From: Octopus sinensis
Lineage: Eukaryota
Assembly: GCF_006345805.1 (NCBI RefSeq)
Contig: NC_043005.1
Span: 53,568,001-53,632,000 of the forward strand
Reading direction: 5' to 3'
DNA: 64,000 nucleotides
A program made the translations under genes and the position numbers. Positions 1-62,139 of this stretch are shown here, in pieces (positions within the stretch are counted from its first letter, which is position 1; each line of letters opens with the position of its first letter). The notes under the pieces were generated by a model. The model was given only the letters and a program-made list of their open reading frames with translations, had not been told where the DNA came from and did no database searches.

Positions 1-716
1 AAGAAACCATAAGAAAAATATGTGTTTGTTTTAAAATTTGAGATTACATAGTATTTTACGGAGGATATGGGCAGTTCCCATGGGCACTATCTTTTGAATT
101 TCTGCAATTTTGGGGTTTCCTGGTATCTGAGCTAGGTAGCAATCATCCCCTTTTGCTATCATTCCTAGGGCACCTATGACAACAGGTATTGTTTTAGTCT
201 TCAGATTCCACATTTTGCTAATTTCTGTTTCAAGATCTTTATTCTTGCTCAGTTTTTGGTAGGTCTTGACAAATACGTTTATATCGATTGGGACAGTCAT
301 ATCAATAAGGAGGCATAATTTTTGTTTGAAGTCTTTCAATATGATGTCTGACTTATTTGCATCTATCTTTCTGTCAGTTTGAATGGTGAAGTTCCAGAGG
401 AGTGAAACGTGATCATTTCAAGCACTGGGGGGGGGGGGGGTCACACCAGTTATTATCATGAGGTAAGTCCAGGTTTTTGCAAATTTCCCAGTGAATATAT
501 TGTGCAGCTCTATTATGCCTGTTGAGATACTCTGAAGGCGCAAGAAGACTGCACTTGGAGACATCATGATAAATGGTCTCATTTTGTTGTTGACATACAC
601 GACATTTTGTGGAGCTGCCGTTCTTTAATATATTGGCCTGGTAGTTCCTTGTAGGTTGGGATTGATCTCGGGTTGCTATGATATACACTTCTGTTTCTGA
701 TTTTAAGCTAGAAGCC

Positions 717-720
<4 letters not shown>
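1..720 (-). mobile_element. Dong/R4-clade (RLE) non-LTR retrotransposon, frameshifted 3' fragment
   Basis: ORF 413-718 has the CCHC knuckle CRVC..ETIYHDVSKC and RHN motif. ORF 31-339 has the RLE C-terminus IDMTVP..DLETEISKMW..IPVVIGALG..GTAHILRK. Abuts a (TAA)n tract on its sense strand. Same family as 22070-23712. Confidence 0.85.
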
Positions 721-5552: not shown

Positions 5553-5926
5553 AGGCGCAGGAGTGGCTGTGTGGTAAGTAGTTTGCTAACCAACCACACG
5601 GTTGCGGGTTCAGTCCCACTGCGTGGCATCTTGGGCAAGTGTCTTCTGCTATAGCCCCGGGCCGACCAATGCCTTGTGAGTGGATTTGGTAGACGGAAAC
5701 TGAAAGAAGCCTGTCGTATATATGTATATATATGTATATGTGTGTGTGTTTGTGTGTCTGTGTTTGTCCCCCTAGCATTGCTTGACAACCGATGCTGGTG
5801 TGTTTACGTCCCCGTCACTTAGCGGTTCGGCAAAAAGAGACCGATAGAATAAGTACTAAAAGGTGGTGCTCCAGCATGGCCGCAGTCAAATGACTGAAAC
5901 AACTAAAAGAGTAAAAGAGTAAGAGA
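5553..5926 (+). mobile_element. tRNA-derived SINE type B, near complete
   Basis: A/B-box-like head, CORE-like CTTGGGCAAGTGTCTT, internal TA/TG tract, (AAAAGAGT)n tail; homologous to 4475, 13646, 35911, 47101, 61542. Confidence 0.9.
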
Positions 5927-7616: not shown

Positions 7617-7816
7617 AAAACCCCCTTCGGTCATGAGTGACCATGGGATTGCACCTAGAAAGTTAGCCTCCCGGACACAAGTCCGGGCAATAATGTTTAT
7701 GGAAGACCAGCAGTCGCCCATGCATAGCGGCCTCCCCTCTCCGCGCCACCAGTGTTATATAAAGGAAAGGCAAAGGCCGATACAGCTTGGCACCTGTGAC
7801 GTCGCAACTCATTTCA
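7617..7816 (-). mobile_element. SINE type D 3' half
   Basis: Reverse complement matches 47700-47900 and 27925-28120 (GCAAGCTGTAT..GACCGAAGGGGGT). Confidence 0.85.
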
Positions 7817-7831
7817 AGTCTGTTTAAGCAT

Positions 7832-8252
7832 TTTATCTGATCAAATTCATCCCTTGGTTCCAGAACTGTTTCTGGAGGGAAACGTAATATTTCAGGATGA
7901 TAATGCACCAATTTACACGGCTAAAGTTGTTACTGTATGGCACGAGGAATATTCTAGGGAATTTGAACATCTTATCTGGTCACCACGTTGCCCAGATCTC
8001 AATATTATCGAACATCTATGGTGCATTTTAGAAAAACAAGTTAGGAGTCGATATCCTCCACCATCATCACTACAAGAACTGGAGGCTGTTTTAGCTGAAG
8101 ACTGGACAAAAATTGGAAACAAATCAAACTTTGTACGAGTCCATGCCTCGTAGAATTCAAGCTGTAATTACTGCCAAAGGTGGTCCTACTCCATATGAAA
8201 ATAAGTTTGCTTGAAATTTTAAGGTGTTGTCATCATTTTATCCAACCCCTAT
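7832..8252 (+). mobile_element. Tc1-family transposase C-terminal fragment with probable 3' TIR
   Basis: ORF 7854-8153 FQDDNAP..WSPRCPDLNIIEHLW (DD34E-type second D and E), ends CATTTTATCCAACCCC-TA. Confidence 0.88.
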
Positions 8253-12529: not shown

Positions 12530-13645
12530 GTAAGTGACAGAAGTTCGAAGAATACTGATAATATCCTGCCAATTCATCTGGCTTTGCTCCGAGACAATAG
12601 AGCTTATGTGAAAATCCTCAATACTGCAATACAGATGTTGTGGCAAACATAATTTTGAACTGATCAAAATGAATCAGCAATCATGGACAAAAGTTCTTGA
12701 TAGCATTTTCGAGTAAATACGCCCGTATATTTGATAAGAACCCATTTATTAATCAATATAGATTGAATTTACTGCATGTAATAAAGAAGTAGGAAGATCT
12801 AAGTTTTCAAGGAAAAGGCAAGTAAAAGACGAATGCTAGGAAAATCACTGTAGAAATGAAGTACTGCTAGAAGATTCTGTGGCAAAATGCCAAAATATTA
12901 TTGCAATAAATATACAAAAACATGTATTCTGATTAAAGTAATACGTAGTTTGAAAGAAATATTGCAACATTATTTACTATTCTCATTCAATTTCTCTTGG
13001 GATATAATGCAAGGTGTAAAAGACTTACATTTTTTTTTTGTCATGTTCGCATTGATAGAAAAATATTGTCTTCTTTATGGAGATGGGAAATAGTAATATA
13101 TTAAGGTAAATTACTTTAGAGATAGAAACTCTAATTTGATTCCAACCAACTCCTTAAGTTTTCATTTATATATCTTAAGCTATACAGAGAGAACTGTTTT
13201 CAGAAAATTCAAAATGACTTATCAAGGGCGAGAAACAAAACTGTGATTAACTGAAAGCTGTATTCAATATGTTCCTTATTTACAAAAGTGGTAGAATGTA
13301 TTTCAAAATAAGCATTTCTAGACAGACCAAACTCCTGTTCCAGTATGTTTCTCAGTGTCATTTATTGAATAATATTCATACACAAACTATTCTAGGTACG
13401 TTTCAATATTTAATAACTTTCTTAATGTATTATTTCTAAGATAATTATTTCGGCCTGTATGCTTATACATATAAATAACAACAACAAGAAAAGGAAAAAG
13501 AAGAAGAAGAAGAAGAAGAACAACAACAACAACAACAACAAAAACAACAACAATAATAATAATAATGATAATAATATTTCCTTCTACTATAGGCACAAGA
13601 CCAGTGCTAAATAATGATAATGACGATGATGACGACGATGATGAT

Positions 13646-14038
13646 AGGTGTGTAGTACGAAGCTTGCTTCCCAACGGCATGGTTCTGGGTTCGGTCTCAC
13701 TGCGTGGCACTTTGGGCAAGTATCTTTTCCTCTTCCTTCCAGCCGACCAAAGCCTTATCAGTGGATTTGGTAGACGGAAAATGAAAGAAGCCCGTCGTAT
13801 ACACTCACACATACTACAGAAACGTTAGCACGCCAGGCGAAATGCGTAGCCGTATTTCGTCTGTCGTTACGTTGTGAGTTCAAATTCCGCCGAGGTCGAC
13901 TTTGCCTTTCATCCCTTCGGGGTCGATAAATAAAGTACCAGTTACGCACTGGGGTCGATTTAATCGACTTAATCCCTTTGTCCGTCCTTGTTTGTCCCCT
14001 CTATGTTTAGCCCCTTGTGGGCAATAAAGAAATATATA

Positions 14039-24679: not shown

Positions 24680-26185
24680 GTGGTGATGTTCCGGAGTGAA
24701 TTGTAGAGGAAACGACAACATTGTTCATGAAAGATTGGTCAAAGGGCAATGAGGTTGGCAATTACCGACCTATTACTTGTCTTAACCTCTTATGGAAAGT
24801 GTTAACAGGCATCCTCGCAGGGGAAAATATACATGTTTCTTGCAGAAAATAATGTACTACCATTAGAACAAAAGGGATGCCGAAAAGGATCCAAGGGCAT
24901 CAAGGACCACCTTGTGATAGACAATGTTGTAATGAAGAATTGCAAACGGTACCAAAACAATTTATGCATGGCCTGGATAGACTTTAAAAAAGCTTACGAC
25001 ATGTTGCCGCCTTTGTGGATTTTGGAAACACTCGATATGTGTGGAATAGCTGAGATCGTGTGTATACGGATTAAGAAAAGCATGCCTAGTTGGAAAACAC
25101 GTCTTTTTCTATAACAACCAGCATTTAGCCGAGGTAAATATCAAAAGAGGTATCTTCCAAGGAGACTTTTGTTCACCTTTGTTATTAGTTATAGCCTTGA
25201 TCCCACTTATTGTAGTCCTACGCAAAGTCAACGCGCTCGATGAACTGAAAAAGAATGGATCTCGTTTCAACCACCTTCGCTTCCTGGATGATTTAATACT
25301 GTTAGCACAAACAAAGCTTGAAATAGAGAGGCTGGCTGACACCGGGATGGAATTCGGTATCTCAAAAGGTGCGGTGCTCAGTTTGAAACGGAGAAAAAGA
25401 GCAGATTGTAGGGGCATAGAATTGCCAAACGGATAGAGAACGGAAGACTCGGATGATAATATGTTCAAGTACCTTGGGATCCGGGAGCTGGACAATATCT
25501 TGCACAGAGAAATGAAAGACAAGGTCATCACAGCATATTTGAAGCGCCTCAAACTTCTCTGAAACTAAAACTGAATTCAAGGAACTTTGTGAATGCCATC
25601 AACATATGGGCTGTTGCTGTAGTCCGCTATAGTGCACTCATCATGAAAAGGACACAAGCGGAGATTAACCAACTCGATCGCACTACCCGAAAGACAATGA
25701 CAATGCATGGTGCCCTTCACCCTAAGGCGAACGTACACCGGCTCTACATGAGGAGAGGTAAGGGTGGACGTGGGCTGATTAGCGTACGGGAGTGCATCAA
25801 GAAACAACAGAATATTTGGTAAACTGCAAACAAGACCTGCTACAGTATGCTGCTAATGCAGAAGGATTTATCAAAAATGGACTTGGAGACCTGAGAATTA
25901 AGATCGCCAATATGTGGCAGCGACGAGAGTCAAACATAAAGGCTGTGCCTATTGTCATTGCAGCATTGGGTTCAATGCCACCCAACCTGAAAACACATCT
26001 TGAGATACCCTACAATTTAAGTGTATTGCAAACATCGGCATTACTTGGAACTGTGCGCATATGGCATAAAGTACTGTCTGTCCGAGGTCCTTGTTGTGAC
26101 TTGACAGACAGTACAAACACCCGGTAGACACAATATCTTCAATGAACAACATTACGATATTGGATGCTGTGCAACATCTTAAATG
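24680..26185 (+). mobile_element. Dong/R4-type LINE reverse transcriptase to 3' end, degenerate
   Basis: EQKGCRKG, AWIDFKKAYD, RGIFQGD, HLRFLDDL, KYLGI, RLYMRRGKGGRGL, VPIVIAALG; (TAA)n tail; short extra 3' end at 24165-24290. Confidence 0.93.
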
Positions 26186-29848: not shown

Positions 29849-30203
29849 GGTGTCCTTAAATTACCTTTATAATTTGAAAAATTCAAATAGAAATTAAAAA
29901 TAAGGGTAACTCAGCAGAGTTTACTGGAAAACAGTCAAGCAAATAACGTTTTACTGGAAACATCAGAACATTGCCCCCTGGGCTCGTCTTATTGCACATA
30001 ATACATCTTGAGGATAAATTGTGGAAGTCGTAAAGGTAATTTATAGGAAAATTCCTAGTAGATAAGTCTGGAATGTGCTGACTGTAAGATAAACAGCGTC
30101 TGTCACAACCCTAGTGAACAGTATTGATCCTTGAGTCACTAACTCCACACACACACACACACACACACACACATGCCACACCTACACACGCATGCACCCC
30201 TGC

Positions 30204-30263
<60 letters not shown>

Positions 30264-30468
30264 GTGTGTGTGTATGTATATATATATATATATATAGATA
30301 AATAGATGCGTGTATTTTCCCTTGTTTTCAGTTAACACGGAAAAAATAGATAAATAGTTACCAAGGTAGCAAAAAATCACACCAGTAAAAAAGCGAAATT
30401 CCTTGTTTTTAAAGGTAGAAAATCCGGGTTTACGTGAAATATTTTGTATAATATAAATAAATAAATAA

Positions 30469-30651
30469 ATAAATGGAGTTAAACGCAGTTGTAATTCAAA
30501 TTGTTTTACTTTCGACACATGTTTCGAAGATATCATTGGTATTATTCCAAATGAATAAAATTGTGTAAAACAATGTAATCTTCTCTTCAGGGAAATGAAG
30601 AAATATACCGTCGGAGGTAAAAGAATTTGAATTGCACCTGCGTTTAACTCC

Positions 30652-30657
<6 letters not shown>
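30469..30657. mobile_element. Mini-element with 48-bp inverted arms enclosing a hammerhead-like motif
   Basis: Arms 30469-30516 and 30610-30657 are inverted with about 6 mismatches. Confidence 0.8.
30509..30595 (-). ncRNA. Type I hammerhead ribozyme candidate, core intact
   Basis: Minus strand TTTCC-CTGAAGA-GAAGAT..ATCTTC-GAAAC-ATGT-GTC-GAAAG; 6-bp stem II, GUC cleavage triplet, one stem I mismatch. Confidence 0.55.
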
Positions 30658-30683
<26 letters not shown>

Positions 30684-35910: not shown

Positions 35911-36124
35911 AAGCGCAGACGTAGCTGTGTGGGAAGACGCTTGCTTCCTAACCACATAGTTCTGGGTTCAGTCCCACCGTATGGCACCTTGGGTAAGTAT
36001 ATTCTACTATAGCCTAGCAGTAATCAAAGCTTTGCGTGTGGATTTGGTTGATGGAAAACTGAAAGACATCCGTCGTATATATCGTGTGTGTGTGTTTGTG
36101 TGTGTGTGTGCGTGTGTGTGCGTG

Positions 36125-36160
<36 letters not shown>

Positions 36161-36610
36161 TGTGTGCTTGTGTGTGTGCGAGTGCGTGTGTTTCCTGTCA
36201 AGGAGATCTTCTGATGTAATAATTACTCAACGGAGGTGCCCAGCTAGTTACTCATCAGGCCGAAGATGTATGTATCTATGTATGTATGTATGTATGTATG
36301 CATGCATGCATGTATGTATGTATGTGTGTATGTGTGTGTGTGTGTATGTATGTATGTATAAATATATAAACAGATAAATATACATGTCCGTGTGCATGTG
36401 TGTGTCTGTGTGTCTTTGCGTCTGTGTTTGTTCCCATCACCGCTTGGCAACTGGTATTGGTTTGTTAACGTCCCCGGAACATAGCAGTTCGGCAAAAGCG
36501 ACCGATAAGATACGTACCAGAGTTTTAAAAAAGTACTGGGATTGATTCGTTGGACTAAAAGTTAATCAAGCCAGTACCCCAGTATGGCCGCAATCTAATA
36601 AATAAAACAG
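35911..36610 (+). mobile_element. SINE type B with expanded internal microsatellite
   Basis: Head and tail match 5553-5926. Confidence 0.82.
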
Positions 36611-36833
36611 GAAAAAGATAAAAATAATTTAATAAGTGTTCCGACCGTGCCCATCGTATTATTTTATTTATCTACTTAATTATTTTCGTCCGGTAAAAAG
36701 TGTTCGTAGTAATACATTATTTATCTTATCCATTATGTTTTAAGGTTACTATTATTACGGAGATGTACTTGCATAGCAAGTGACTTGATCTGGGATCGTG
36801 TCCTAAAACAAAAACAATTGCAGCGTGGAAGAT

Positions 36834-37067
36834 GTTTGCAAGCCATTCAAGAACACACAAAAACCGTTATTTTCACTCCTACGTTGAAATTTCATTTGTG
36901 TCAAAATATTTTCCTTAATCTGTTCACTGACTAAAGTTCGTGTTGCTCGAAGTTTTATCAGTGAACGGGTCACGGTTTCAAAGCGACGAAAATATTTTGA
37001 CACAAATGAACTTTAAATGTTGAAGTGAAACTAACGGTTTCTGTGTGTTTTTGAATGGCTTACAAAC
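36834..37067. repeat. Palindromic MITE-like element
   Basis: 80-bp inverted arms 36834-36913 and 36988-37067, plus inner stem GTTCACTGA/TCAGTGAAC. Confidence 0.85.
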
Positions 37068-37219
37068 AAGATTATTATTGCTTGAAGAAAATGTGGACCA
37101 ATTGTAACAGCCTTAGAGAAATTGCTGTGTGATATTTGGTCAGCCTCGCTATTATCTGGTTTCAAATCTGGTTGAGGTCAATCAGAACGCTAGATATGTA
37201 GCATCTCTTTCAACTGCAG

Positions 37220-37306
37220 CGTCCTGAAACTTATGCTTACAATGAAACTTGGTGCCAAGATGTACTGGCCCAAGTTGGCCGCCATTACTTTGGACAGAAA
37301 TTGACG
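37220..37306 (+). CDS. Candidate exon RPETYAYNETWCQDVLAQVGRHYFGQKLT
   Basis: Acceptor TCTCTTTCAACTGCAG|, donor ACG|GTGAGG, 87 bp phase 0-0; partly duplicated at about 37642-37720. Confidence 0.25.
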
Positions 37307-38593
37307 GTGAGGAAAGAGGGGATTTGCATGCAAGGGTAACTGCTAGACTTGTCCCCAAAATGTTCCCATGCCCGCACATACATGTATAGATGCATATGCT
37401 TATTGTTTTTCTTTTACTTGTTTCAGCCATTGGGTTGTGGTCATTCTGGAGCATCACCTAGAAACATTTTTGCTCAATCATATAGACTCCAATATTTATT
37501 TGAACTCACTTTATTTGTCTCTTATTGTTGAACCGTTAAGTTACGGTAACACAAACTACCGTCTGATGTCAAGCAATAAGAGATAAATGTGAATCAGTAC
37601 TCCACAACATATTTTTCGCTTGCGGTTCACTTATATTCATTTCAAGATGTACTGGTCCAAGTTGGCACCCTTTCTTTGGACAAACATCGATGGCTAGAAA
37701 AGAGGGGATTTACATGCACTAAATATATAACTAAAAGTATAGCATCGTCTCGTGGCACACCAGTGTGCCGCAGCATACCACTTGCGAAGCACTGATATAA
37801 ATAGACACAAGCATGAACACATAGACCATAAGAATATATATAAATATACTTATACACACGTTCATGCACATATAAATGCACGCGCACACATGTGCGCACA
37901 CACACATACATACAAACACACAAACACACAAACAAGCATACAAATATACACATATACATAAATACAATCGCGCGTGCGCATACACTCATATATTTATCTA
38001 TTATCTATCTATAAATATATATACACACACACACAAGCACACACAAACATATATATACATATATATACATACATATATGCATATATATATATATATATAT
38101 GAAAAAATGTTTGAAAATGCAATTTAAACGATGTTTATTTACTTAACCGGTTTCACTCTTTGGTAAAAGATTGTCAAAAGTAACATTGAATATTATGGGT
38201 TCAAAAAAAAGTTTTTTACATAATTGTCACATTGAATATTATGAATTCAAAAATGTTTGTTTATACATAATTGTCACATTACATGTATAAATATAGTATA
38301 AAAAAGTTCAATAGTGTGATGAGAATATTTGGAAAAATTGGCAGAAAAGAATAAAACAAATATATTATTGGAAATTTGGTTGCGTTAATTATTGGTTGTC
38401 GCAAATTGTCACATTACATGTATATATATACAGTCTTTGGTAGAAAGGACATGTTAAAGACATAAGGAAGTGTAATAGTTTGGTGAGAAAGCTTGTAATA
38501 TTGACAGAGAAAATTAAAATGGATATTTTAGACATCTCAGAATATTTTGAATCGAAGGCGAGAATTTGTTTTTTACTGACCTGTTTGTTTTAG

Positions 38594-38684
38594 CAGAAAA
38601 GTTGAATTGAGAGAAAAAAAGATATGTACCCAGTTTCGTTTATACTTCCCCTTCAAGCATCAGTGATTTTGGGGTTATTGGGAG
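38594..38684 (+). other. Exon-like cassette in left arm (ATG 38624, MYPVSFILPLQASVILGLLG, phase-1 donor)
   Basis: TACTGAC..TTTGTTTTAG|CAG acceptor, in-frame TGA 21 nt before ATG, GAG|GTGAGT donor. Confidence 0.4.
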
Positions 38685-39398
38685 GTGAGTATGCGGGTGT
38701 GAATAGATGTGTCCGTGTGCCTGCTGGTCAGACAGCGTCTGTTTGTCACACACATATATACACACACACACAACAACAATACACACACACACATAGTATA
38801 CACACACACACCACATACACACAACACACACACACAGAACACACACACACACAAGGCACCCACATATATAATATATACACACAGCACATGTATATGTGGT
38901 ATATCTATGTATGTGTATGTAAACACTATTTATATGTATATATGTATATATGTATATGCATTGTCTATATATATTATATGTATGTATTGCGTATGTATAT
39001 TGCATGCATATATTGTGTATGTGTATTATATACATGCTGTGTATGTGTATTGTATGTGTATATATATGCTAGGTGTATTTGTGTGATATTTATATTATGT
39101 ATATATGTGTGCGTGTGTTGTGTGTGTGTGTGTGTTGTGTGTGTATGTGTTATATATGTGTGTATATTATATATAAATACATGTTATATTTGTGTGCTGT
39201 GTGTATATATTATATATGTGGGTGCGTTGTGTGTGTGTGTGTTCTGTGTGTGTGTGTGTTGTGTGTATGTGGTGTGTGTGTGTATACTATGTGTGTGTGT
39301 GTATTGTTGTTGTGTGTGTGTGTATATATGTGTGTGACAAACAGACGCAGTCTGACCAGCAGGCACACGGACACATCTATTCACACCCGCATACTCAC

Positions 39399-39489
39399 CT
39401 CCCAATAACCCCAAAATCACTGATGCATGAAGGGGAAGTATAAACCAAACTGGGTACATATCTTTTTTTCTCTCAATTCAACTTTTCTG
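39399..39489 (-). other. Mirror exon-like cassette in right arm (ATG 39459, MYPVWFILPLHASVILGLLG)
   Basis: Same splice signals; two amino-acid differences from the left copy. Confidence 0.4.
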
Positions 39490-40018
39490 CTAAAACAAAC
39501 AGGTCAGTAAAAAACAAATTCTCGCCTTCGATTCAAAATATTCTGAGATGTCTAAAATATCCATTTTAATTTTCTCTGTCAATATTACAAGCTTTCTCAC
39601 CAAACTATTACACTTCCTTATGTCTTAACATGTCCTTTCTACCAAAGACTGTATATATATACATGTAATGTGACAATTTGCGACAACCAATAATTAACGC
39701 AACCAAATTTCCAATAATATATTTGTTTTATTCTTTTCTGCCAATTTTTCCAAATATTCTCATCACACTATTGAACTTTTTTATACTATATTTATACATG
39801 TAATGTGACAATTATGTATAAAAAAACATTTTTGAATTCATAATATTCAATGTGACAATTATGTAAAAAACTTTTTTTTGAACCCATAATATTCAATGTT
39901 ACTTTTGACAATCTTTTACCAAAGAGTGAAACCGGTTAAGTAAATAAACATCGTTTAAATTGCATTTTCAAACCTTTTTTCATATATAATCCCACTCGTG
40001 CGATACCCCACAACTCAA

Positions 40019-40050
<32 letters not shown>

Positions 40051-40478
40051 AGTGTGTGTGTGTGTGTGTTTGTGTATCTTACGATAAGTGTTTTCTTTTA
40101 CACAGTTTCCTTCACTAATTTCCTGTTTGAGGCATTATTCGTTCAGGGACTACAGTAGAGGACACTTACTCAAAGTACCACGCACTGATACCGAACTCAA
40201 AACTATGTGGTTGTGAGCCGACCTTATTATCTACGCAACCACGAACGACGGAAGCCCTATTATCTTCAACGATCTACCAGTCTACCAGTCTACCAGTCTA
40301 CCATTCCTCTTCATTGCCCATATTAATCTCTTCTTCGTTAAAATATGGAGGAAGTCTCACATCCTTGAATATTAATTTCTTGGACTGAGTACGAGGCGAT
40401 TCGATCCGCTATTCCAGAGAGTTGAACGTTGGAGTATTTTGCTGTTGTTTATACATCTGGTGTTCTCTTTTATTTTGT

Positions 40479-47100: not shown

Positions 47101-47104
<4 letters not shown>

Positions 47105-47485
47105 CAGGAGTGGCTATGTTGTAAGGAGCTTGCTTACCAACCACATGGTCCCGGGTTCAGTCCTACTGCGTGGAAACTTGGGAAGGTGTCTTCTGCTATA
47201 GTCTTGGGCCGACCAAAGCCTTGTGAGTAGGTTTGGTACATAGAAACTAAAAGAAGCCTGTCGTATGTGTGTGTGTATATCTGTGTGTCTGTGTTTGTCC
47301 TCCAACCATCGTTTGACAGCTGATGCTGGTGTGTTTACGTCCCCGTAACTTAGCAGTTCGGCAAAAGAGAACCGATAGAATAAGTACGACTTACAAACAA
47401 TAAGTCTTGGGGGTGATTTGATCGATTAATAGCGGTGCTCCAGCATGGTCGCAGTTAAATGAATGAAATAAATAAAGAATAAAAG
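47101..47485 (+). mobile_element. SINE type B
   Basis: Matches 5553-5926. Confidence 0.9.
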
Positions 47486-47997: not shown

Positions 47998-49214
47998 GAT
48001 TTTCACCTTTACCCAATGTTAGCTAGGCACATTAGATCAATGCCCTCAAAGATTTTTGACATTGCACAAACACTTTGGTCTGTTAGATTTCTCTGGTTAC
48101 AATATCACACTTGCCCTCGTTATTCTGTCGGTACCTATCTACCTACCTACCTAACTACCTGCTTGCTTGTCTGTCTGTCTATCTGCATACATGCATACAG
48201 GCATGCACATAGGCTAGTAGAAAATCAGTAGAAAATATATACCGAAGGGGGTCTTTTACCTATATATTACAAACATATACATATATACATACACACACAC
48301 ACACGCGCGCGCACACACATATTACTTATCCTACAATCTAATAAGTATTGAGTCCTATTTTGTAGTATGATATATTTAAACTTCATTTCAATGTGCGATA
48401 ATTGTGTATCTATTGTATGTATGAGTGAGTACAAATCCTAGTTTATACTCAAATGAAGAAAATATAAATTTGCATGAATATATACACACAAATATAAGTA
48501 CAAAGCATATACGCCAGGGCTAATACATGCATATTGTTTGTTTTTTAAATATATATGTATTGATTTGATTTTTTGTTTAGATCCTTAGATTAGGTTATTT
48601 CATTATATCGTTCTGGATTCCGTATAATAAATATATATTTCAAATTTGTATTACATTCTATAGTTTCGTGTTCTATTTAAACAATAATTATAATTTTATA
48701 CATACATACACATATACACACACATATACGCACACACACACACATACATCATACATACATATGCAAGTGAAGTTCATGAATTTCGGTACATTTTTATACT
48801 TTTATAGGTATTAACCACCGCGTAACGCCTCCAGTTTGTTAAGACTATGATTATACAGGCATAGACACATACATATATACGTATACAGACATAAGTAATA
48901 TACATATATATGAAACAGCGAATGTTTATTTACATATGTATGCATTATATATATATATAAAGCGAGAGAGCGAGAAATTGACAGACAGACAGATAATAGG
49001 TAGCTAGATAGATTCACTTTATATTCTTTGTCTCAAATTAAAAATTGGAAGTTCAATATTTAACACATATTGCTATATGAGAGCATGCGTAGGCGTGTAT
49101 CTGAGCTTAAACTTGTGAGTGTATATATCTATGCATAAATACATGCGTGTATGTATGCTTATGTAGGCTTCTATGCTTGTATATATTTGTCCCTGCATAT
49201 ATATATATATATAT

Positions 49215-49249
<35 letters not shown>

Positions 49250-49255
<6 letters not shown>

Positions 49256-50029
49256 CATTTATACTCGTATATGCATACATTTATATATATATTCATATTT
49301 GCATTTATATTCACATATACACATACTTATATAAGAGTGATGAATTCTGAATGAAAATTTTGAAAATAATGTATTTTACAATAATGGTTATTTAAAAGTT
49401 ATTTACAGCCAATATATATGTGTGAGAGAGAGCGTTTGTGCGTCTGTTTCTGTGGAAATAAATGTGTTTTAGAAGTATCAGCTTTATAAATGAAAGAGAT
49501 ATTTTGTATATAATGTGAATATGAATTTTTATAGTTGATAAAATACACTCGATTTTCTTTGTATCCAATTCAAATGTAAAGTTCAATATTTAATACTCAA
49601 TTCAATATCCGATATGTGTTTGTGCCTGCCTGTGTGAGAGAGTGTGTGGAAGAAAATGTATATTATATTGCAGTTATTTTGTAGTGTTAAACAAATACGT
49701 ATTACAAGTTACCGAAATTTATTTTATATGTGAAGAGGAGCGACAACACAAAATATTTTTTATTCGCAACAAATATGAAATTTACGGGGAAGCATGACAT
49801 AAGATTTTTATTATGAACAATGAAAAACATTCGAATAATATTTCTATACATTAGGCATGTTTTCATGTTTTATTAGTATTTAGATTAATTTCGCGCTTTC
49901 TAATACCAGAAATATGAAAACATATAAAACTGCATAACAGTTACTTTTCTCTTCTCCCTCCTTGTCTCTCAATCTCTGTCTCTCTCTCACGTAAACACAC
50001 ATACATACATACATACCTACATACATACA

Positions 50030-50061
<32 letters not shown>

Positions 50062-50146
50062 CACACACACACACATATGTATAAGTATATATATTCTTTA
50101 TTTTTATTCTTTTATTCATTCCAGCCATGTAACTGCGCTCATGTAG

Positions 50147-50209
<63 letters not shown>

Positions 50210-50988
50210 CATTTATACTCGTATATGCATACATTTATATATATATTCATATTTGCATTTATATTCACATATACACATACTTATATAAGAGTGATGAATT
50301 CTGAATGAAAATTTTGAAAATAATGTATTTTACAATAATGGTTATTTAAAAGTTATTTACAGCCAATATATATGTGTGAGAGAGAGCGTTTGTGCGTCTG
50401 TTTCTGTGGAAATAAATGTGTTTTAGAAGTATCAGCTTTATAAATGAAAGAGATATTTTGTATATAATGTGAATATGAATTTTTATAGTTGATAAAATAC
50501 ACTCGATTTTCTTTGTATCCAATTCAAATGTAAAGTTCAATATTTAATACTCAATTCAATATCCGATATGTGTTTGTGCCTGCCTGTGTGAGAGAGTGTG
50601 TGGAAGAAAATGTATATTATATTGCAGTTATTTTGTAGTGTTAAACAAATACGTATTACAAGTTACCGAAATTTATTTTATATGTGAAGAGGAGCGACAA
50701 CACAAAATATTTTTTATTCGCAACAAATATGAAATTTACGGGGAAGCATGACATAAGATTTTTATTATGAACAATGAAAAACATTCGAATAATATTTCTA
50801 TACATTAGGCATGTTTTCAATGTTTTATTAGTATTTAGATTAATTTCGCGCTTTCTAATACCAGAAATATGAAAACATATAAAACTGCATAACAGTTACT
50901 TTTCTCTTTCTCCCTCCTTGTCTCTCAATCTCTGTCTCTCTCTCACGTAAACACACATACATACATACATACATAATACATACATACA

Positions 50989-51020
<32 letters not shown>

Positions 51021-51104
51021 CACACACACACATATGTATAAGTATATATATTCTTTATTTTTATTCTTTTATTCATTCCAGCCATGTAACTGCGCTCATG
51101 TAGC
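49250..51104 (+). repeat. Tandem duplication, about 954-bp period, junctions in (TA)n
   Basis: 49250-50147 repeats at 50204-51104; identical ORFs 49392-49586 and 50346-50540. Confidence 0.97.
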
Positions 51105-51105
51105 A

Positions 51106-51180
<75 letters not shown>

Positions 51181-51839: not shown

Positions 51840-53615
51840 CAGTGCAAGCATCTTGGTTTACTTGATGTTTACTTTAATGCCAAATCGATGGTAGGTCATA
51901 GCAAAGTTCTTCACAAATTGTTTTTCTTTTAATGACTGCTTTATCGCCAGCATATTTACGTTCTGAAATGCGTTGCATCTATATAAGACGTTTGATGGAA
52001 GTCTACTTAGATTGAAAAGTCCACCATACCTATATCTTATGATAACTATTAGGTTGTCCGGAAAGTTCGTGCCCATTTTTAAAGGAAAGAAAAATGTCAA
52101 TAAATACTTGCCATTACATTTTTAATCAACTAAATACGAACCATTTTGTTGCACAATGCGCCTCCATCATTCCTTTAAAGGTAAAAATACCCTCTTCCCA
52201 GAATTGAGGTTGTTTCATGGCAAATAATTCATCAAGGTATCTTTTTACGTTATCCAAGGAATTGAAATGTTTACCATTAAGACTATTGTGCAGAGACCTG
52301 AATAAGTGGAAATCCGAAGGAGCAATATCTGGTGAATATGGAGGGTGGGGTAACACATCCCAGCCGAGCTGCAGCAATTTTTGTCTCGTTCCCAAAGCAT
52401 CAAGTGCCGAAAATGAGCTTTCTTACCTTCCATTTTAAACGGTTACATAATTAACACAGGTTATAGTAATATAAACCTTCTTCCACGAAAAGATAACTTA
52501 AACTCTGCTCTAAATGGAGGTGTAGTCAAATCCTATTTTATGGGCTCAGCCATGTTCTAAAATAAGTCGAAATTTAAGCTACTATAAACCGGCATGAACT
52601 TTTCGGAAAACCCAATAGATTGTCTGGAGAAATTCCGTGTAGTATTACAGTCAGATACAAGGAAAATAGCGTAGGTGCCAAGACGCATCCTTGTTTTAGT
52701 CCGCTCGTGGCTGGAAATTATTCTAGCGGCATGTTTTGTGTGAATACACGTTTAGATATTGTCATGATTTGTTTGCACCAGAGAGATAAAGTGGTCGGGA
52801 CATCCGAAACAATAAAGAACCTTTCAGCTGTTGAGACGCTATCAAATGGCGTTTCTAAGTCACAGAAAGCAAGGAAGAGAGGCGGTTTTGTTGTTTCTTG
52901 TTTTTCTCTTAGAGTTGTCTTACACAAAAAATCATACCGATTGTGCCACAAAAGGCATGGAATCTACATTGAGATTCTAGTAAGATCTTTTCGGCGATGA
53001 TCTGGAGCCGAATATTGGCAAAGACCTTTCCAGTGTTGGAGGGTAATAATGTTCCTTTATAGTTTTCACAAGATTTGCGTCACCTTTTTTCAAGTTTGTT
53101 ATAATGACTGCATCTTTCAGTTCTTTAGGAACTTGTTGGGATTCCCATATCTTCAGAATGAGGGTGAAAATGTGTGTTTGCAAGAGTAAGCCTCCATGTT
53201 TGATCAGTTCAAAAGGGATGTTATCTTGTCTTAAAGATTTCTTTGATCTCATTTGCTTCATAGCTTACTTGAATTCTTGAAAAATGGACCCACAACTAAA
53301 GAGGGGAATTTAGAACGTTTCTAAGGAAGTCCTCAGCTGTGTTCGAGTTTCTGTCGAGGAGGGTGGAAAAATGTTCCTTCCAGCGTGTTGTGGATTGGTC
53401 AGGATGTTTATGTTGTCAGTTGCTTGAAGGGATGTAGTTGATGTTTGTATCGGTCCAACTAGTTGTTTCGTTAGAACATAGAAATTTCTGAAATTAAGTG
53501 CATCTGCTTTTTGTTGCACCAAATGTTCTGAAGTTCCTTAATTTTGTTCGACACTCCTGTTTTAGCTGCTGGAATTGCTTCATTTCGATTCGGTGTTATG
53601 TGATGGTCTTACATG
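51840..53615 (-). mobile_element. RTE-clade LINE RT region, interrupted by mariner
   Basis: DNIPFELIKHGG..VPKELKDAVII..KKGD, PLFLAFCDLETPFDSV, GLKQGCVLAPTLF, IRYRYGGLFNLSRL, FGIKVNIK. Confidence 0.92.
52047..52617 (-). mobile_element. Internally deleted mariner (mellifera-like) with both TIRs and TA TSD
   Basis: TA-TTAGGTTGTCCGGAAAGTTCGTGCC ... GGCATGAACTTTTCGGAAAACCCAA-TA; MEGKKAHFRHLMLW fused to LGWDVLPHPPYSPDIAPSDFHLFRSL. Confidence 0.95.
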
Positions 53616-57596: not shown

Positions 57597-57636
<40 letters not shown>

Positions 57637-57638
57637 TC

Positions 57639-57887
57639 AAGAAGTGGAGAGTGTGAACACAGAAAAAATCAATTTATTTATATAATAGTCAGTTTCATGT
57701 AGCCTACGCACGTTTCAATTTTCACCTTCATTCATATTTTACAAATTACATAAAGAATTTAAAAGGTAAAATCTCTTAATTGTAATATGTGAATGAAGGT
57801 GGGAATTGAAACGTGCGTAGGCAACATGAATTTGGCTATTATCTAAATTATTTGATTTTTTCTGTGTCCACAGTTTCCATATTCTTT
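57639..57887. repeat. About 110-bp imperfect hairpin containing hammerhead half-motifs
   Basis: Arms 57639-57748 and 57777-57887; each carries GAAAC-GTGC-GTA-GGC. Confidence 0.9.
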
Positions 57888-58130
57888 ATATTATATTATT
57901 GAATTTTAATCTCCTATATCGGATATATGAAATTATCTATAACGACAACTGGAACTAAGAGTTAAGCAATAATGTCGAAGAATCATCAATAAACACCAAT
58001 ACTAACACAAATTAACAAATTCCAGGAAAATTAATCGATAAGGAGATATACCGGTGTACATTTGGGTGAAATACATCCCTGTGAGAGAGCAACCTCTTTC
58101 CATTCGAAACTTCATAAACATTCGGTATAT

Positions 58131-60244: not shown

Positions 60245-60503
60245 TACCAATTGATTTAGCGCAAGGGATACCATAGAGTGTTAGATGACAATCCGATTAT
60301 ATAACCTTACGCTCATCAGAGTTACCCGATATGGAAGGGGATGTGGTTACTGCTCTCTATTGTCGGTAGTATTAATCCACCTCCGACAATAGAGAGCAGT
60401 CGCCTTATTGCCTTTCACATCGGCTAACTCTGATGAGCGTAAGGTTATATAATCGGATTGTTATCTAACACTCCATTGTATCCCTTGCGTTAAACCGATT
60501 GTC
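60245..60503. repeat. About 118-bp-arm hairpin made of two inverted hammerhead-like units
   Basis: Arms 60248-60366 and 60383-60501, 16-nt loop; CTGATGA at 60430-60436 (plus) and 60313-60319 (minus). Confidence 0.92.
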
Positions 60504-60657: not shown

Positions 60658-61006
60658 CTACCAAGAATTCAGAACGACATCGACCCCACAAGCGTAAACA
60701 AGAGAGACAGAGACAGGCAGAAACAAGGAAAATGCCTCTTGTATTTGAATACTATGCAAATATTCTTTTAAAATACTTTTCATTTAAGTTTTCCAAAATT
60801 TAATTGTTTTCTATACTTACAGCTGAAAAAGTTTCAATGACTAAAAGCGGTACTGAAATGTTTTTTATAAAATTATTTTCGCATTTACTACCTTGACTTT
60901 TTCCATATATATATCAACTCTTGTGTTCCTTTTCAACCTTCTACACACACACACACACACACACATACATATATATATATATGCTTGTATGTATGTATGT
61001 ATGTAC

Positions 61007-61078
<72 letters not shown>

Positions 61079-61513: not shown

Positions 61514-61541
61514 ATGTGTGTGCTTATGTGTGTGCATATAT

Positions 61542-61693
61542 AGGCGCAGGAGTGGGTGTGTGTTAAGCAGCTTGCTCACCACAGTTCCGGTGTGTGACAC
61601 CTTGAGCAAGTGTCTTCCGCTATAGCCTCTGGCCGACCAAAGCCTTGTGAGTAGATTTGGTAGACGTAAACTGAAAGAAGCCCCTCGTATGTC

Positions 61694-61726
<33 letters not shown>

Positions 61727-61934
61727 TTGTGTGTCTTTGTCCCCCACCATCACTTGACAACACCGATACTGTTGTGTTCACGTCCCCGTAGCCTAGAGGT
61801 TCGGCAAAAAGGACCGACAAAATAAGCACTTAGCTTACAAAGAATGAGTCCTGGGGTTGATTTATTCAACTAAAGGCGGTTATCCAGCATGGCCGCAGTC
61901 AAACTACTGAAACAAATAAAGGAGTAAAAGAGTA
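61542..61934 (+). mobile_element. SINE type B
   Basis: Matches 5553-5926. Confidence 0.88.
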
Positions 61935-62139
61935 AATACATGGAAATTTTGTGACTTCGCTATTTACATTAACCTTAACCTTAAGGAATTGCTGTCAATG
62001 CAAGACTTGAAATCTGAGTCGAAAACCTAACACTAAAGAAGCGATGCCTCAAGTTTACTGATTCCAAGAAAATTACTTTAAACACAACTTTTCCATAAGA
62101 CTTATCAACTCATAACACAAAATAATATCAAGAGCAGCC

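What the first reader, a model, noticed from the sequence alone, without database searches (positions are those of the whole stretch)
38094..39988. 1.9-kb fold-back: 795-bp near-identical inverted arms each carrying a start-codon exon cassette
Seen: the arms differ at only about 7 positions. Each contains a branch-like TACTGAC, pyrimidine tract, TAG/CAG acceptor, 30-nt leader with an in-frame stop, ATG, 20 mostly hydrophobic codons and a GAG|GTGAGT phase-1 donor; the two cassettes point toward each other. The TG-rich spacer is compositionally continuous with the right arm and switches abruptly at the left arm. This suggests one 1.1-kb unit of which 795 bp was recently duplicated in inverted form, rather than a typical MITE. 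No transposase is present and only TA lies at the ends. Inference: any read-through transcript would fold into about 795 bp of dsRNA burying the exon and its splice sites, giving exon skipping, ADAR hyper-editing or endo-siRNAs. Alternatively it is a Foldback-like element carrying a signal-peptide exon that could be donated to genes on either strand.
Basis: partly seen in the sequence, partly recalled or inferred. Interest (0 to 1): 0.75.

Follow-up and report, generated by a model that had tools for sequence, protein, structure and literature searches.

The report
Octopus 1.9-kb fold-back repeat, probably transposon-derived
A real 1.9-kb hairpin-forming inverted repeat sits in transposon-rich octopus DNA; it most likely is a non-coding "foldback" mobile element (or a local inverted duplication), and its exon look-alike has no support as a real exon.

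Summary
Arms 38094-38888 and 39193-39988 (795 nt) differ by 6 substitutions and 2 small indels. They flank a 304-nt TG/TA-rich spacer that continues the right arm's composition and switches abruptly at the left arm.

Such a cassette is expected 0.03-0.13 times per 64 kb by chance. Its peptide has no relative in 5.8 billion proteins, including Octopus bimaculoides. Its hydrophobicity is ordinary, and both differences inside it change the amino acid.

The window is octopus DNA full of decayed SINE, LINE and Tc1/mariner copies, with no host domain detected.

Two findings favour an inserted foldback-type non-autonomous transposon:
- The arm is the only place in the window where a non-microsatellite 12-mer occurs three times.
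- The flanks read as two halves of a (CA)n(TA)n(TG)n microsatellite of a kind seen intact elsewhere in the window.

A local fold-back or template-switch duplication and an assembly artefact remain live, because no octopus genome could be searched for further copies. Read-through RNA would form about 790 bp of dsRNA, a plausible ADAR substrate, but this is untested. Ordinary kind; low to moderate interest.

The parts
38094..38888 (+). Left arm of the fold-back (795 nt). The outer 7-8 nt are TA repeat, and the unique sequence starts at about 38101 (GAAAAAATGTTTG...).
38889..39192 (.). Spacer or loop of 304 nt. It is TG/TA-rich imperfect microsatellite (C 0.04), continuous in composition with the inner right arm and discontinuous with the left arm.
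39193..39988 (-). Right arm, the reverse complement of the left arm. It differs by 6 transversions, a 1-nt indel and a 2-nt indel.
38183..38280 (+). 46-bp tandem repeat (2.1 copies) in the subterminal part of the left arm. Its mirror lies at 39802-39899.
38222..38415 (+). Three copies of the 12-mer AATTGTCACATT (38222, 38269, 38404). The mirror copies are at 39667, 39802 and 39849 on the minus strand. This motif occurs nowhere else in the window.
38101..38113 (+). Terminal motif GAAAAAATGTTTG. It recurs 146 nt further in (38240-38259, 80% over 20 nt), and a degenerate inverted copy ends the 36-nt unique stretch at 40013-40024.
   Evidence: read from the sequence
38745..38888 (+). Inner, imperfect (CA)n domain of the left arm. 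Its mirror (TG)n domain is at 39193-39340.
38574..38690 (+). Exon-like cassette, left copy: TACTGAC, pyrimidine tract, TAG/CAG, 30-nt leader, ATG 38624, 20 codons (MYPVSFILPLQASVILGLLG), GAG|GTGAGT.
39393..39509 (-). Exon-like cassette, right copy (MYPVWFILPLHASVILGLLG), pointing towards the left copy.
37870..38100 (.). Left flank: a CA/TA compound microsatellite ending in (TA)n directly against the arm.
39989..40024 (.). 36-nt unique stretch (ATCCCACTCGTGCGATACCCCACAACTCAACTTTTTT) between the right arm and the right-flank (TA)13. It is unexplained and may be the element's original right end.
40025..40077 (.). Right flank: (TA)13 GAG (TG)9. It mirrors the left flank's (CA)n(TA)n.

Best explanation
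The unit is a non-autonomous, Foldback-type (long terminal inverted repeat) DNA transposon, or the relic of one. It consists of two inverted copies of one transposon end joined by a microsatellite-like middle, and it sits in the (TA)n core of a (CA)n(TA)n(TG)n compound microsatellite in a transposon-rich, gene-poor stretch of an octopus genome.

Each arm has the layout of a transposon end:
- a terminal motif that recurs subterminally;
- a 46-bp tandem repeat and three copies of a 12-mer, which could serve as transposase-binding sites;
- an inner repetitive (CA)n domain.

The unit encodes nothing and would have to be moved in trans. The exon look-alike is either fortuitous or a relic of the parent element's leader and first exon that was drawn into the extended inverted repeat, as happens in Galileo '2RT' copies. 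It is not a working host exon.

Shown: the structure, the arm-specific repeats, the flank symmetry, and the lack of coding capacity and of protein relatives.
Inferred: mobility, family membership, insertion rather than in-situ duplication, and the fate of any read-through RNA (about 790 bp of dsRNA that ADAR and/or Dicer could act on).
For: 1. 795-nt arms at 99.2% identity around a short non-coding middle. This is the architecture of Galileo 2T/2RT copies, whose two TIRs are 98-100% identical, carry tandem repeats and can be extended by recruiting internal sequence (PMC3573991). It is also the architecture of the MuTAnT foldback MULEs, which lie in TA microsatellites and have ambiguous TSDs (PMC4486113).

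2. The arm is the only place in 64 kb where a non-microsatellite 12-mer occurs three times within 650 nt. AATTGTCACATT gives 6 matches, all in the arms, and 0 of 100 shuffles reach that number. There is also a 46-bp tandem repeat, weaker ~140-nt internal periodicity and a recurring terminal motif. A randomly chosen duplicated segment would have this property about 1-2% of the time.

3. The flanks are (CA)n(TA)n on the left and (TA)n(TG)n on the right. Intact (CA)n(TA)n(TG)n tracts exist at 30170-30290 and 60950-61050. I estimate a roughly 2% chance of a matching tract lying there in that orientation by accident. This is what an insertion into the TA core would leave.

4. Mobile elements dominate the window. 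The only Pfam domains found among 133 ORFs are RVT_1, DDE_3, HTH_48 and zf-RVT. Several SINE copies and at least three unrelated MITE-like palindromes are present.
Against: No second copy of the arm was found: none in the window and none in the metagenome, prokaryote-genome or viral collections, which were never expected to hold octopus DNA. Multi-copy status, the defining property of a transposon, is therefore untested.

No transposase is linked to the unit. The decayed Tc1/mariner fragments in the window share no terminal similarity with it.

The target-site duplication is undecidable, and the termini match no superfamily signature that I know.

A 36-nt unique stretch (39989-40024) interrupts the otherwise neat 'split microsatellite' picture.

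A 954-bp tandem duplication of similar age, bounded by (TA)n, lies 10 kb away. Non-transposon, TA-tract-mediated duplication therefore operates locally.

All six arm differences are transversions (p about 0.01 against the window's own spectrum). Simple neutral divergence of a transposon's two ends does not predict that.
Confidence: 0.45

Rival explanations
1. A single-locus inverted duplication that is not a transposon. A break or stalled fork in the microsatellite led a 3' end to fold back or switch strands. It copied about 795 nt of the neighbouring sequence in reverse, with the right arm plus spacer as the original. It then rejoined through the self-complementary (TA)n tract.
For: The spacer continues the right arm's composition, and the only abrupt switch is at the left-arm/spacer junction 38888|38889. 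The outer junction carries 7 nt of TATATAT shared with the right arm's flank. Both junctions lie in microsatellites. A 954-bp tandem duplication bounded by (TA)n with 0.5% divergence lies 10 kb away. Human inverted duplications have exactly this form, with arms, a single-copy spacer and 2-8 nt of inverted microhomology (PMC3907307). An all-transversion difference spectrum could reflect error-prone repair synthesis at the time of duplication; this last point is my inference.
Against: This reading does not explain why the duplicated piece is the one segment in the window with triple subterminal motifs. It also does not explain why mirror-image compound microsatellites flank the whole unit. Earlier TA runs inside the arm did not end the copying. 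Known fold-back duplications are much larger.
Confidence: 0.28
2. An assembly artefact: a chimeric or palindromic long read, or a haplotype joined in inverted orientation next to a hard-to-sequence microsatellite. In that case only one arm exists in the animal.
For: The arm divergence of 0.75% plus two slippage-type indels is in the range of heterozygosity or residual consensus error. Both near-identical ~1-kb duplications in the window abut (TA)n tracts, which are difficult to sequence. An all-transversion spectrum is odd for natural divergence.
Against: There are no Ns in the window. The structure is internal to 64 kb of contiguous unique sequence. It has a 304-nt asymmetric spacer rather than a zero-spacer palindrome. 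The flanks are different on each side and are sensible.
Confidence: 0.12
3. A functional element. Either a real 5' coding exon (signal-peptide-like) present in two convergent copies, or a hairpin-RNA locus kept for siRNA production or as an ADAR substrate.
For: All three splice signals sit at full consensus with an ATG-open frame. This is the best exon-like candidate in the window: it is the only one of 21 loose candidates with a TACTRAC motif, and it is expected only 0.003-0.13 times per window. It has perfect dsRNA potential. Octopus has very high hyper-editing (PMC5625713).
Against: No protein among 5.8 billion shares three 5-residue words with the peptide, and the four profile-free hits are artefacts of internally repeated proteins. 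No Rfam family reaches threshold. Two of two substitutions in the frame are non-synonymous. The hydrophobicity is ordinary. The acceptor belongs to an internal repeat. No host coding exon was detected anywhere in the window.
Confidence: 0.05
4. Two independent insertions of one retroposon-like element, tail to tail, each ending in a (CA)n tail.
For: Each arm ends internally in a CA-rich tail. A TATATG hexamer lies both just before the left arm (38096-38101) and 2 nt after it (38891-38896), read from the sequence.
Against: The 140-nt imperfect tail is 99% identical between the arms, which independent retrotranspositions would not give. The homology runs 7-8 nt into the outer flanks. No matching duplication was found around the right copy. 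There is no third copy in 64 kb.
Confidence: 0.05

Closest known systems
Galileo '2T' and '2RT' non-autonomous copies (P superfamily, Drosophila); PMC3573991
   Same: Two long TIRs (up to about 1.26 kb) that are 98-100% identical within a copy, around a short non-coding middle. Tandem repeats lie a few hundred nt from the TIR end. TIRs can be extended by recruiting internal sequence next to one end, which could carry a leader or first exon into both arms.
   Different: Galileo has defined 7-bp TSDs, a known transposase and many copies. None of these could be shown here, and there is no sequence similarity.
MuTAnT foldback MULEs that target (TA)n microsatellites (Medicago); PMC4486113
   Same: A foldback element with near-identical modular TIRs, flanked by TA repeats, whose TSD is hard to read because the flanks are repetitive.
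   Different: MuTAnTs are plant elements, mostly 200-300 bp, with GGGG/CCCC termini, 9-nt TSDs, 218 copies and an identified mudrA-like autonomous partner. Here the unit is 1.9 kb, from an animal, with no partner and unknown copy number.
Drosophila FB elements and C. elegans Tc4, the classic fold-back transposons. The Tc4 figures (about 1.6 kb, about 774-bp arms, short loop) are from my own memory of Yuan et al. 1991; that paper is not held.
   Same: Overall size, arm length, a short loop and no coding capacity in the common form.
   Different: No sequence relationship was tested. The target sites differ: Tc4 duplicates TNA and FB duplicates 9 bp.
Non-recurrent inverted duplications formed by fold-back or template switching; PMC3907307
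   Same: Inverted arms separated by a single-copy spacer, with junctions at short inverted or self-complementary sequences.
   Different: The human cases are kilobases to megabases long and end in terminal deletions or translocations. Here 795 nt were copied interstitially.
Palindromic repeats as ADAR hyper-editing substrates, such as the frog Harbinger MITE; PMC5625713
   Same: One element can form tight dsRNA on its own, and octopus is among the most hyper-edited animals studied.
   Different: Editing of this locus has not been observed. It is a prediction only.

Membership tests
Foldback-type / long-TIR non-autonomous DNA transposon | Long, near-identical terminal inverted repeats around a short non-coding middle | tested here: met
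   795-nt arms at 99.2% identity, a 304-nt spacer, and only low-complexity ORFs.
Foldback-type / long-TIR non-autonomous DNA transposon | Subterminal or internal direct repeats within the TIRs | tested here: met
   A 46-bp tandem repeat, a 12-mer present three times per arm and unique to the arms, and a recurring terminal motif.
Foldback-type / long-TIR non-autonomous DNA transposon | Target-site duplication of fixed length flanking the ends | tested here: inconclusive
   With ends read as TG...CA, the flanks allow TA, TATA or TATATA. The ends lie in a TA repeat.
Foldback-type / long-TIR non-autonomous DNA transposon | Several genomic copies with the same ends and different flanks | not testable with these tools
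   No octopus genome is held. There is no second copy in the window. The metagenome, prokaryote and viral scans gave only chance hits or none.
Foldback-type / long-TIR non-autonomous DNA transposon | A related autonomous element or transposase that shares the termini | tested here: inconclusive
   The window's Tc1/mariner fragments (DDE_3 at 7800-8150; HTH_48) show no terminal similarity above the shuffled-sequence score. A partner need not lie nearby.
MITE | Small size (under about 0.8 kb) and high copy number | tested here: not met
   The unit is 1,895 nt. The window's MITE-like palindromes are 234-263 nt with 69-85% arm identity.
Fold-back / template-switch inverted duplication (not a transposon) | Inverted arms with a single-copy spacer and microhomology at the junctions | tested here: inconclusive
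   The spacer is present. The outer junction shares TATATAT. Any microhomology at the inner junction would be hidden inside the arms.
Fold-back / template-switch inverted duplication (not a transposon) | A unique locus, with an ancestral allele carrying one arm plus the spacer | not testable with these tools
   This needs the source genome, sister species or population reads.
Real protein-coding 5' exon | Splice signals and an open frame beyond what chance gives | tested here: inconclusive
   Expected 0.13, 0.03 or 0.003 per window by increasing strictness. The donor octamer occurs at chance frequency.
Real protein-coding 5' exon | The encoded peptide occurs in a known or predicted protein | tested here: not met
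   No candidate was found among 5.8 billion proteins, which include O. bimaculoides UniRef entries. The hits among 1.84 billion representatives are artefacts of internally repeated proteins.
Real protein-coding 5' exon | Transcript and splice-junction evidence | not testable with these tools
   No RNA data are available.
Hairpin-RNA / ADAR-substrate locus | Ability to form long, near-perfect dsRNA | tested here: met
   MFE -1438 kcal/mol, with 787 of 795 arm bases paired.
Hairpin-RNA / ADAR-substrate locus | Transcription through both arms; editing or small RNAs observed | not testable with these tools
   No RNA data. No Rfam family reaches threshold.

The most novel reading that the evidence does not exclude
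The unit is a copy of a still-mobile Foldback-type family in octopus that targets (TA)n tracts. It carries a splice-competent ATG exon in both orientations, so an insertion in an intron can donate a new hydrophobic N-terminus on either strand. Alternatively, when read through, it makes an ~790-bp hairpin that feeds the unusually active cephalopod ADAR or siRNA machinery.
Probability: 0.06. Interest if true: 0.6.

Novelty: new member of a known kind. Interest (0 to 1): 0.25.

Why it matters
If this is a transposon, it would add a long-TIR, TA-microsatellite-targeting foldback family to the cephalopod repeat catalogue. Long near-perfect inverted repeats are the main source of the dsRNA that ADAR hyper-edits, and octopus is among the most hyper-edited animals known (PMC5625713). 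A catalogue of such units would therefore help explain where that signal comes from.

If it is instead a local duplication, it is a clean small-scale example of microsatellite-mediated inverted duplication. If it is an artefact, it marks a weak spot of the assembly.

None of these outcomes would overturn current understanding.

Tried and rejected
- **Looking up window ORFs in public assemblies** to find the same locus elsewhere: nothing on record for three ORFs.
- **Protein search with the exon peptide plus intron read-through:** no candidate. The profile-free search returned four hits. The two sequences inspected (P0121, P0123) are internally repeated proteins that accumulate weak scores, so the hits are rejected.
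- **Metagenome scan for the paired 12-mer:** 69 loci, none with extended similarity to the arm, so these are chance matches.
- **Prokaryote-genome and viral scans:** zero matches.
- **Full-text search for the motifs in papers:** two unrelated hits.
- **Rfam:** nothing at gathering scores. At relaxed thresholds there are only far-sub-threshold matches to microsatellite-derived miRNA families. No tRNA was found.
- **Pfam on 133 ORFs:** only transposon domains, so no host gene context could be established.
- **Terminal similarity to the window's Tc1/mariner fragments:** at the level of shuffled sequence.
- **Reconstructing an empty site from a split, reversed SINE** (halves at 37405-37590 and 40088-40260): suggestive but too decayed and microsatellite-ridden to fix the insertion boundaries.
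- **Two independent tail-to-tail insertions:** rejected as the main reading, because the imperfect (CA)n tail is 99% identical in both arms.
- **The last homologue search was left unused.** One search showed that the only octopus proteins in that database are UniRef gene models, so it could not reveal further copies.
Full report
**1. The observation**

The repeat finder and a gapped alignment agree on the structure.
- 38094-38888 pairs with the reverse complement of 39193-39988.
- The arms differ by six substitutions, a 1-nt indel (an A run at 38456) and a 2-nt indel in a CA run.
- The 304 nt between the arms (38889-39192) are an imperfect TG/TA microsatellite.

| Segment | C | G |
|---|---|---|
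| Inner left arm | 0.36 | 0.04 |
| Spacer | 0.04 | 0.21 |
| Inner right arm | 0.03 | 0.36 |

The only abrupt switch is therefore at 38888|38889.

Folded as one RNA strand, the unit reaches -1438 kcal/mol with 787 of 795 arm bases paired arm to arm. Three shuffles gave about -405 kcal/mol.

All the splice-like motifs, the in-frame TGA in the leader, the 20-codon frame and the phase-1 GAG|GTGAGT are at the stated coordinates in both arms. The window has no Ns.

**2. Where this is**

A LINE-type ORF at the window's start is 76-88% identical to many Octopus bimaculoides UniRef proteins and only about 60% identical to anything else. The window is therefore octopus or closely related octopod DNA.

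Of 133 non-low-complexity ORFs, the only Pfam matches are RVT_1, DDE_3, HTH_48 and zf-RVT. Several copies of a SINE with an internal microsatellite, other repeat families and at least three unrelated 234-263-nt palindromic MITE-like elements are present. I found no host coding exon. Whether the fold-back lies in an intron or between genes is unknown.

**3. Is the exon cassette real?**

The motifs are present, but the supporting tests come out negative or neutral.
- The donor octamer AGGTRAGT occurs three times in both strands of the window against 3.03 expected. Two of the three are the two arm copies.
- Among 177 looser GTRAG sites, 21 have an upstream ATG-open frame of at least 10 codons and a pyrimidine-tract acceptor. 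Six of those also have a YTRAY motif. Only the arm pair has TACTRAC.
- Block shuffles give 0.13 strict cassettes per window, 0.033 with YTRAY and 0.0033 with TACTRAC. This is the best exon look-alike in the window. In a genome of gigabase size (from my own knowledge), on the order of a thousand or more such cassettes would arise by chance.
- 15% of open 20-codon ATG frames in the window are as hydrophobic, as expected in T-rich DNA.
- The 'acceptor' TTAGCAGAAAAG is the third copy of an internal 12-mer, after TTGGCAGAAAAG and TTGGTAGAAAGG.
- The donor lies in a TG-rich stretch (GGTGAGTATGCGGGTGTGAATAGATGTGTCCGTGTG). GTGAGT is one change away from GTGTGT. This is read from the sequence.
- The peptide, with or without read-through, has no relative. 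No protein among 5.8 billion shares three 5-residue words with it. The four hits of a search without a word index are internally repeated proteins that add up weak scores.
- Two of the six arm differences fall in the 61 coding nt, and both change the residue (S5W, Q11H).

I conclude that a working exon is unsupported but not excluded. Only RNA data can settle it.

**4. What the arms look like**

The unique part of the arm (38101-38744) is internally repetitive in a way seen nowhere else in the window.
- It holds a 46-bp tandem repeat of 2.1 copies.
- The 12-mer AATTGTCACATT occurs at 38222, 38269 and 38404. The six matches in the window are all in the arms, and 0 of 100 shuffles reach six.
- A sliding scan shows the arm is the only place in 64 kb where any non-microsatellite 12-mer occurs three times within 650 nt.
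- The terminal motif GAAAAAATGTTTG recurs 146 nt further in.
- Thirds of the arm align weakly to each other, with z about 3.6-5.6.
- The inner 140 nt are an imperfect (CA)n domain.

A terminal motif, subterminal direct repeats, an inner repetitive domain and a variable middle together form the textbook layout of Foldback-like and other long-TIR transposon ends. Galileo is a close parallel: its TIRs reach about 1.26 kb, carry tandem repeats 264-467 nt from the end, are 98-100% identical within a copy, and can be extended by recruiting adjacent internal sequence (PMC3573991).

**5. The flanks**

BLAST extends the inverted alignment beyond the arms, to 38021-38888 against 39193-40077. The extension is (CA)n(TA)n on the left and (TA)13 GAG (TG)9 on the right. 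The right side is interrupted by a 36-nt unique stretch at 39989-40024.

Comparable compound tracts occur about eight times per strand in the window. One lying against the arm in the matching orientation has roughly a 2% chance by my estimate.

Intact (CA)n(TA)n(TG)n tracts exist at 30170-30290 and 60950-61050. The simplest reading is that about 1.9 kb was inserted into the TA core of such a tract.

Foldback elements that target TA microsatellites are known. In MuTAnT the TSDs were likewise hard to read because of the repetitive flanks (PMC4486113).

The 36-nt stretch ends in CAACTTTTTT, a degenerate inverted copy of the left terminus. It may be the element's original right end, left outside when the left end was copied inward. 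That is speculation.

**6. The main rival**

An in-situ fold-back or template-switch duplication, with the right arm plus spacer as the original, explains several things neatly:
- the one-sided composition switch;
- the TATATAT shared at the outer junction;
- the placement of both junctions in microsatellites.

Human inverted duplications have the same form, with arms, a spacer and microhomology (PMC3907307).

The window also holds a 954-bp tandem duplication (49197-51175) bounded by (TA)n on all three sides, with 5 mismatches in 1020 aligned positions. TA-tract-mediated duplication of about the same age has therefore happened 10 kb away.

This rival does not explain why the copied piece is the one segment with transposon-end architecture, nor the mirrored flanks.

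**7. An oddity**

All six substitutions between the arms are transversions. Among older repeat pairs in the same window, 54% of 518 differences are transitions, which gives p of about 0.01.

Possible causes are error-prone synthesis when the second arm was made, biased mismatch repair during arm-to-arm gene conversion, consensus errors in the assembly, or chance. I could not distinguish among them.

**8. Artefact**

An internal position, distinct flanks, an asymmetric spacer and non-identical arms all argue against a simple palindromic-read artefact. However, 0.75% divergence is within plausible heterozygosity, and both young duplications abut TA tracts that are hard to sequence. Only spanning reads can exclude an artefact.

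**9. Verdict**

I put the readings at these probabilities:
- Foldback-type non-autonomous transposon, or its relic: about 0.45.
- Local inverted duplication: about 0.28.
- Assembly artefact: about 0.12.
- Two independent tail-to-tail insertions of one retroposon-like element: about 0.05.
- Functional exon or hairpin-RNA locus: about 0.05.

Whatever its origin, read-through transcription would give about 790 bp of near-perfect dsRNA. Across animals this is the kind of substrate in which ADAR hyper-editing is found, and octopus has one of the two strongest hyper-editing signals among the species compared (PMC5625713). That consequence is inferred, not observed.

The structure belongs to known kinds, and its interest is low to moderate. 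The decisive test, a copy search in octopus genomes, could not be run with the collections available here.

Noticed in passing
window 49197-51175: A tandem duplication of a 954-bp unit (2.07 copies, 5 mismatches and 5 small indels in 1020 aligned nt) bounded by (TA)n on the left, in the middle and on the right. With the fold-back, it is one of only two repeat pairs above 98% identity in the window.
   Followed up: partly
window 38108, 38259, 38637, 38656, 38734, 38855 (left-arm coordinates): All six substitutions between the arms are transversions. Older repeat pairs in the same window show 54% transitions (280 of 518), giving p of about 0.01. The cause is unknown.
   Followed up: partly
window 36833-37068, 57631-57893, 60248-60501, 30447-30680: Four 234-263-nt self-complementary, MITE-like elements with 69-85% arm identity and no similarity to one another. 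The first is flanked by AGA on both sides.
   Followed up: partly
window 37405-37590 and 40088-40260: The 3' half and the 5' half of an old SINE, both in reverse orientation, bracket the fold-back and its microsatellites. They may be one SINE copy split through its internal microsatellite.
   Followed up: partly
window 5555-5856, 13645-13801, 35913-36560, 47103-47387, 61536-61941: Copies of a SINE with an internal (TA)n(TG)n microsatellite. ARAGORN calls no tRNA in them and Rfam gives no match. The copy at 35913-36560 has extra sequence inside its microsatellite.
   Followed up: no
window 30170-30290 and 60950-61050: Palindromic compound microsatellites of the form (CA)n(TA)n(TG)n. The same arrangement seems to have been split by the fold-back.
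   Followed up: partly
window 7800-8150 (+), 24806-25433 (+), 416-718 (-), 34-417 (-): Decayed transposon coding fragments: Tc1-like DDE_3, LINE RVT_1, zf-RVT, and a LINE C-terminal ORF 76-88% identical to O. bimaculoides proteins. A mariner-like C-terminal fragment at 52129-52422 (-) was recognised by eye only.
   Followed up: partly
window 37256-37332 and 37643-37718: A 77-nt direct repeat (83% identical, 386 nt apart) on either side of the reversed SINE 3' half. It is not conserved at the protein level.
   Followed up: no
protein P0003: A UniRef entry labelled 'hypothetical protein, Escherichia coli' is 79% identical to the octopus LINE ORF. It is most likely a contaminated or mislabelled record.
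   Followed up: no
window 39989-40024: A 36-nt stretch, unique in the window, lies between the right arm and the right-flank (TA)13. It ends in CAACTTTTTT, which resembles the arm terminus in inverted orientation. Its origin is unexplained.
   Followed up: partly
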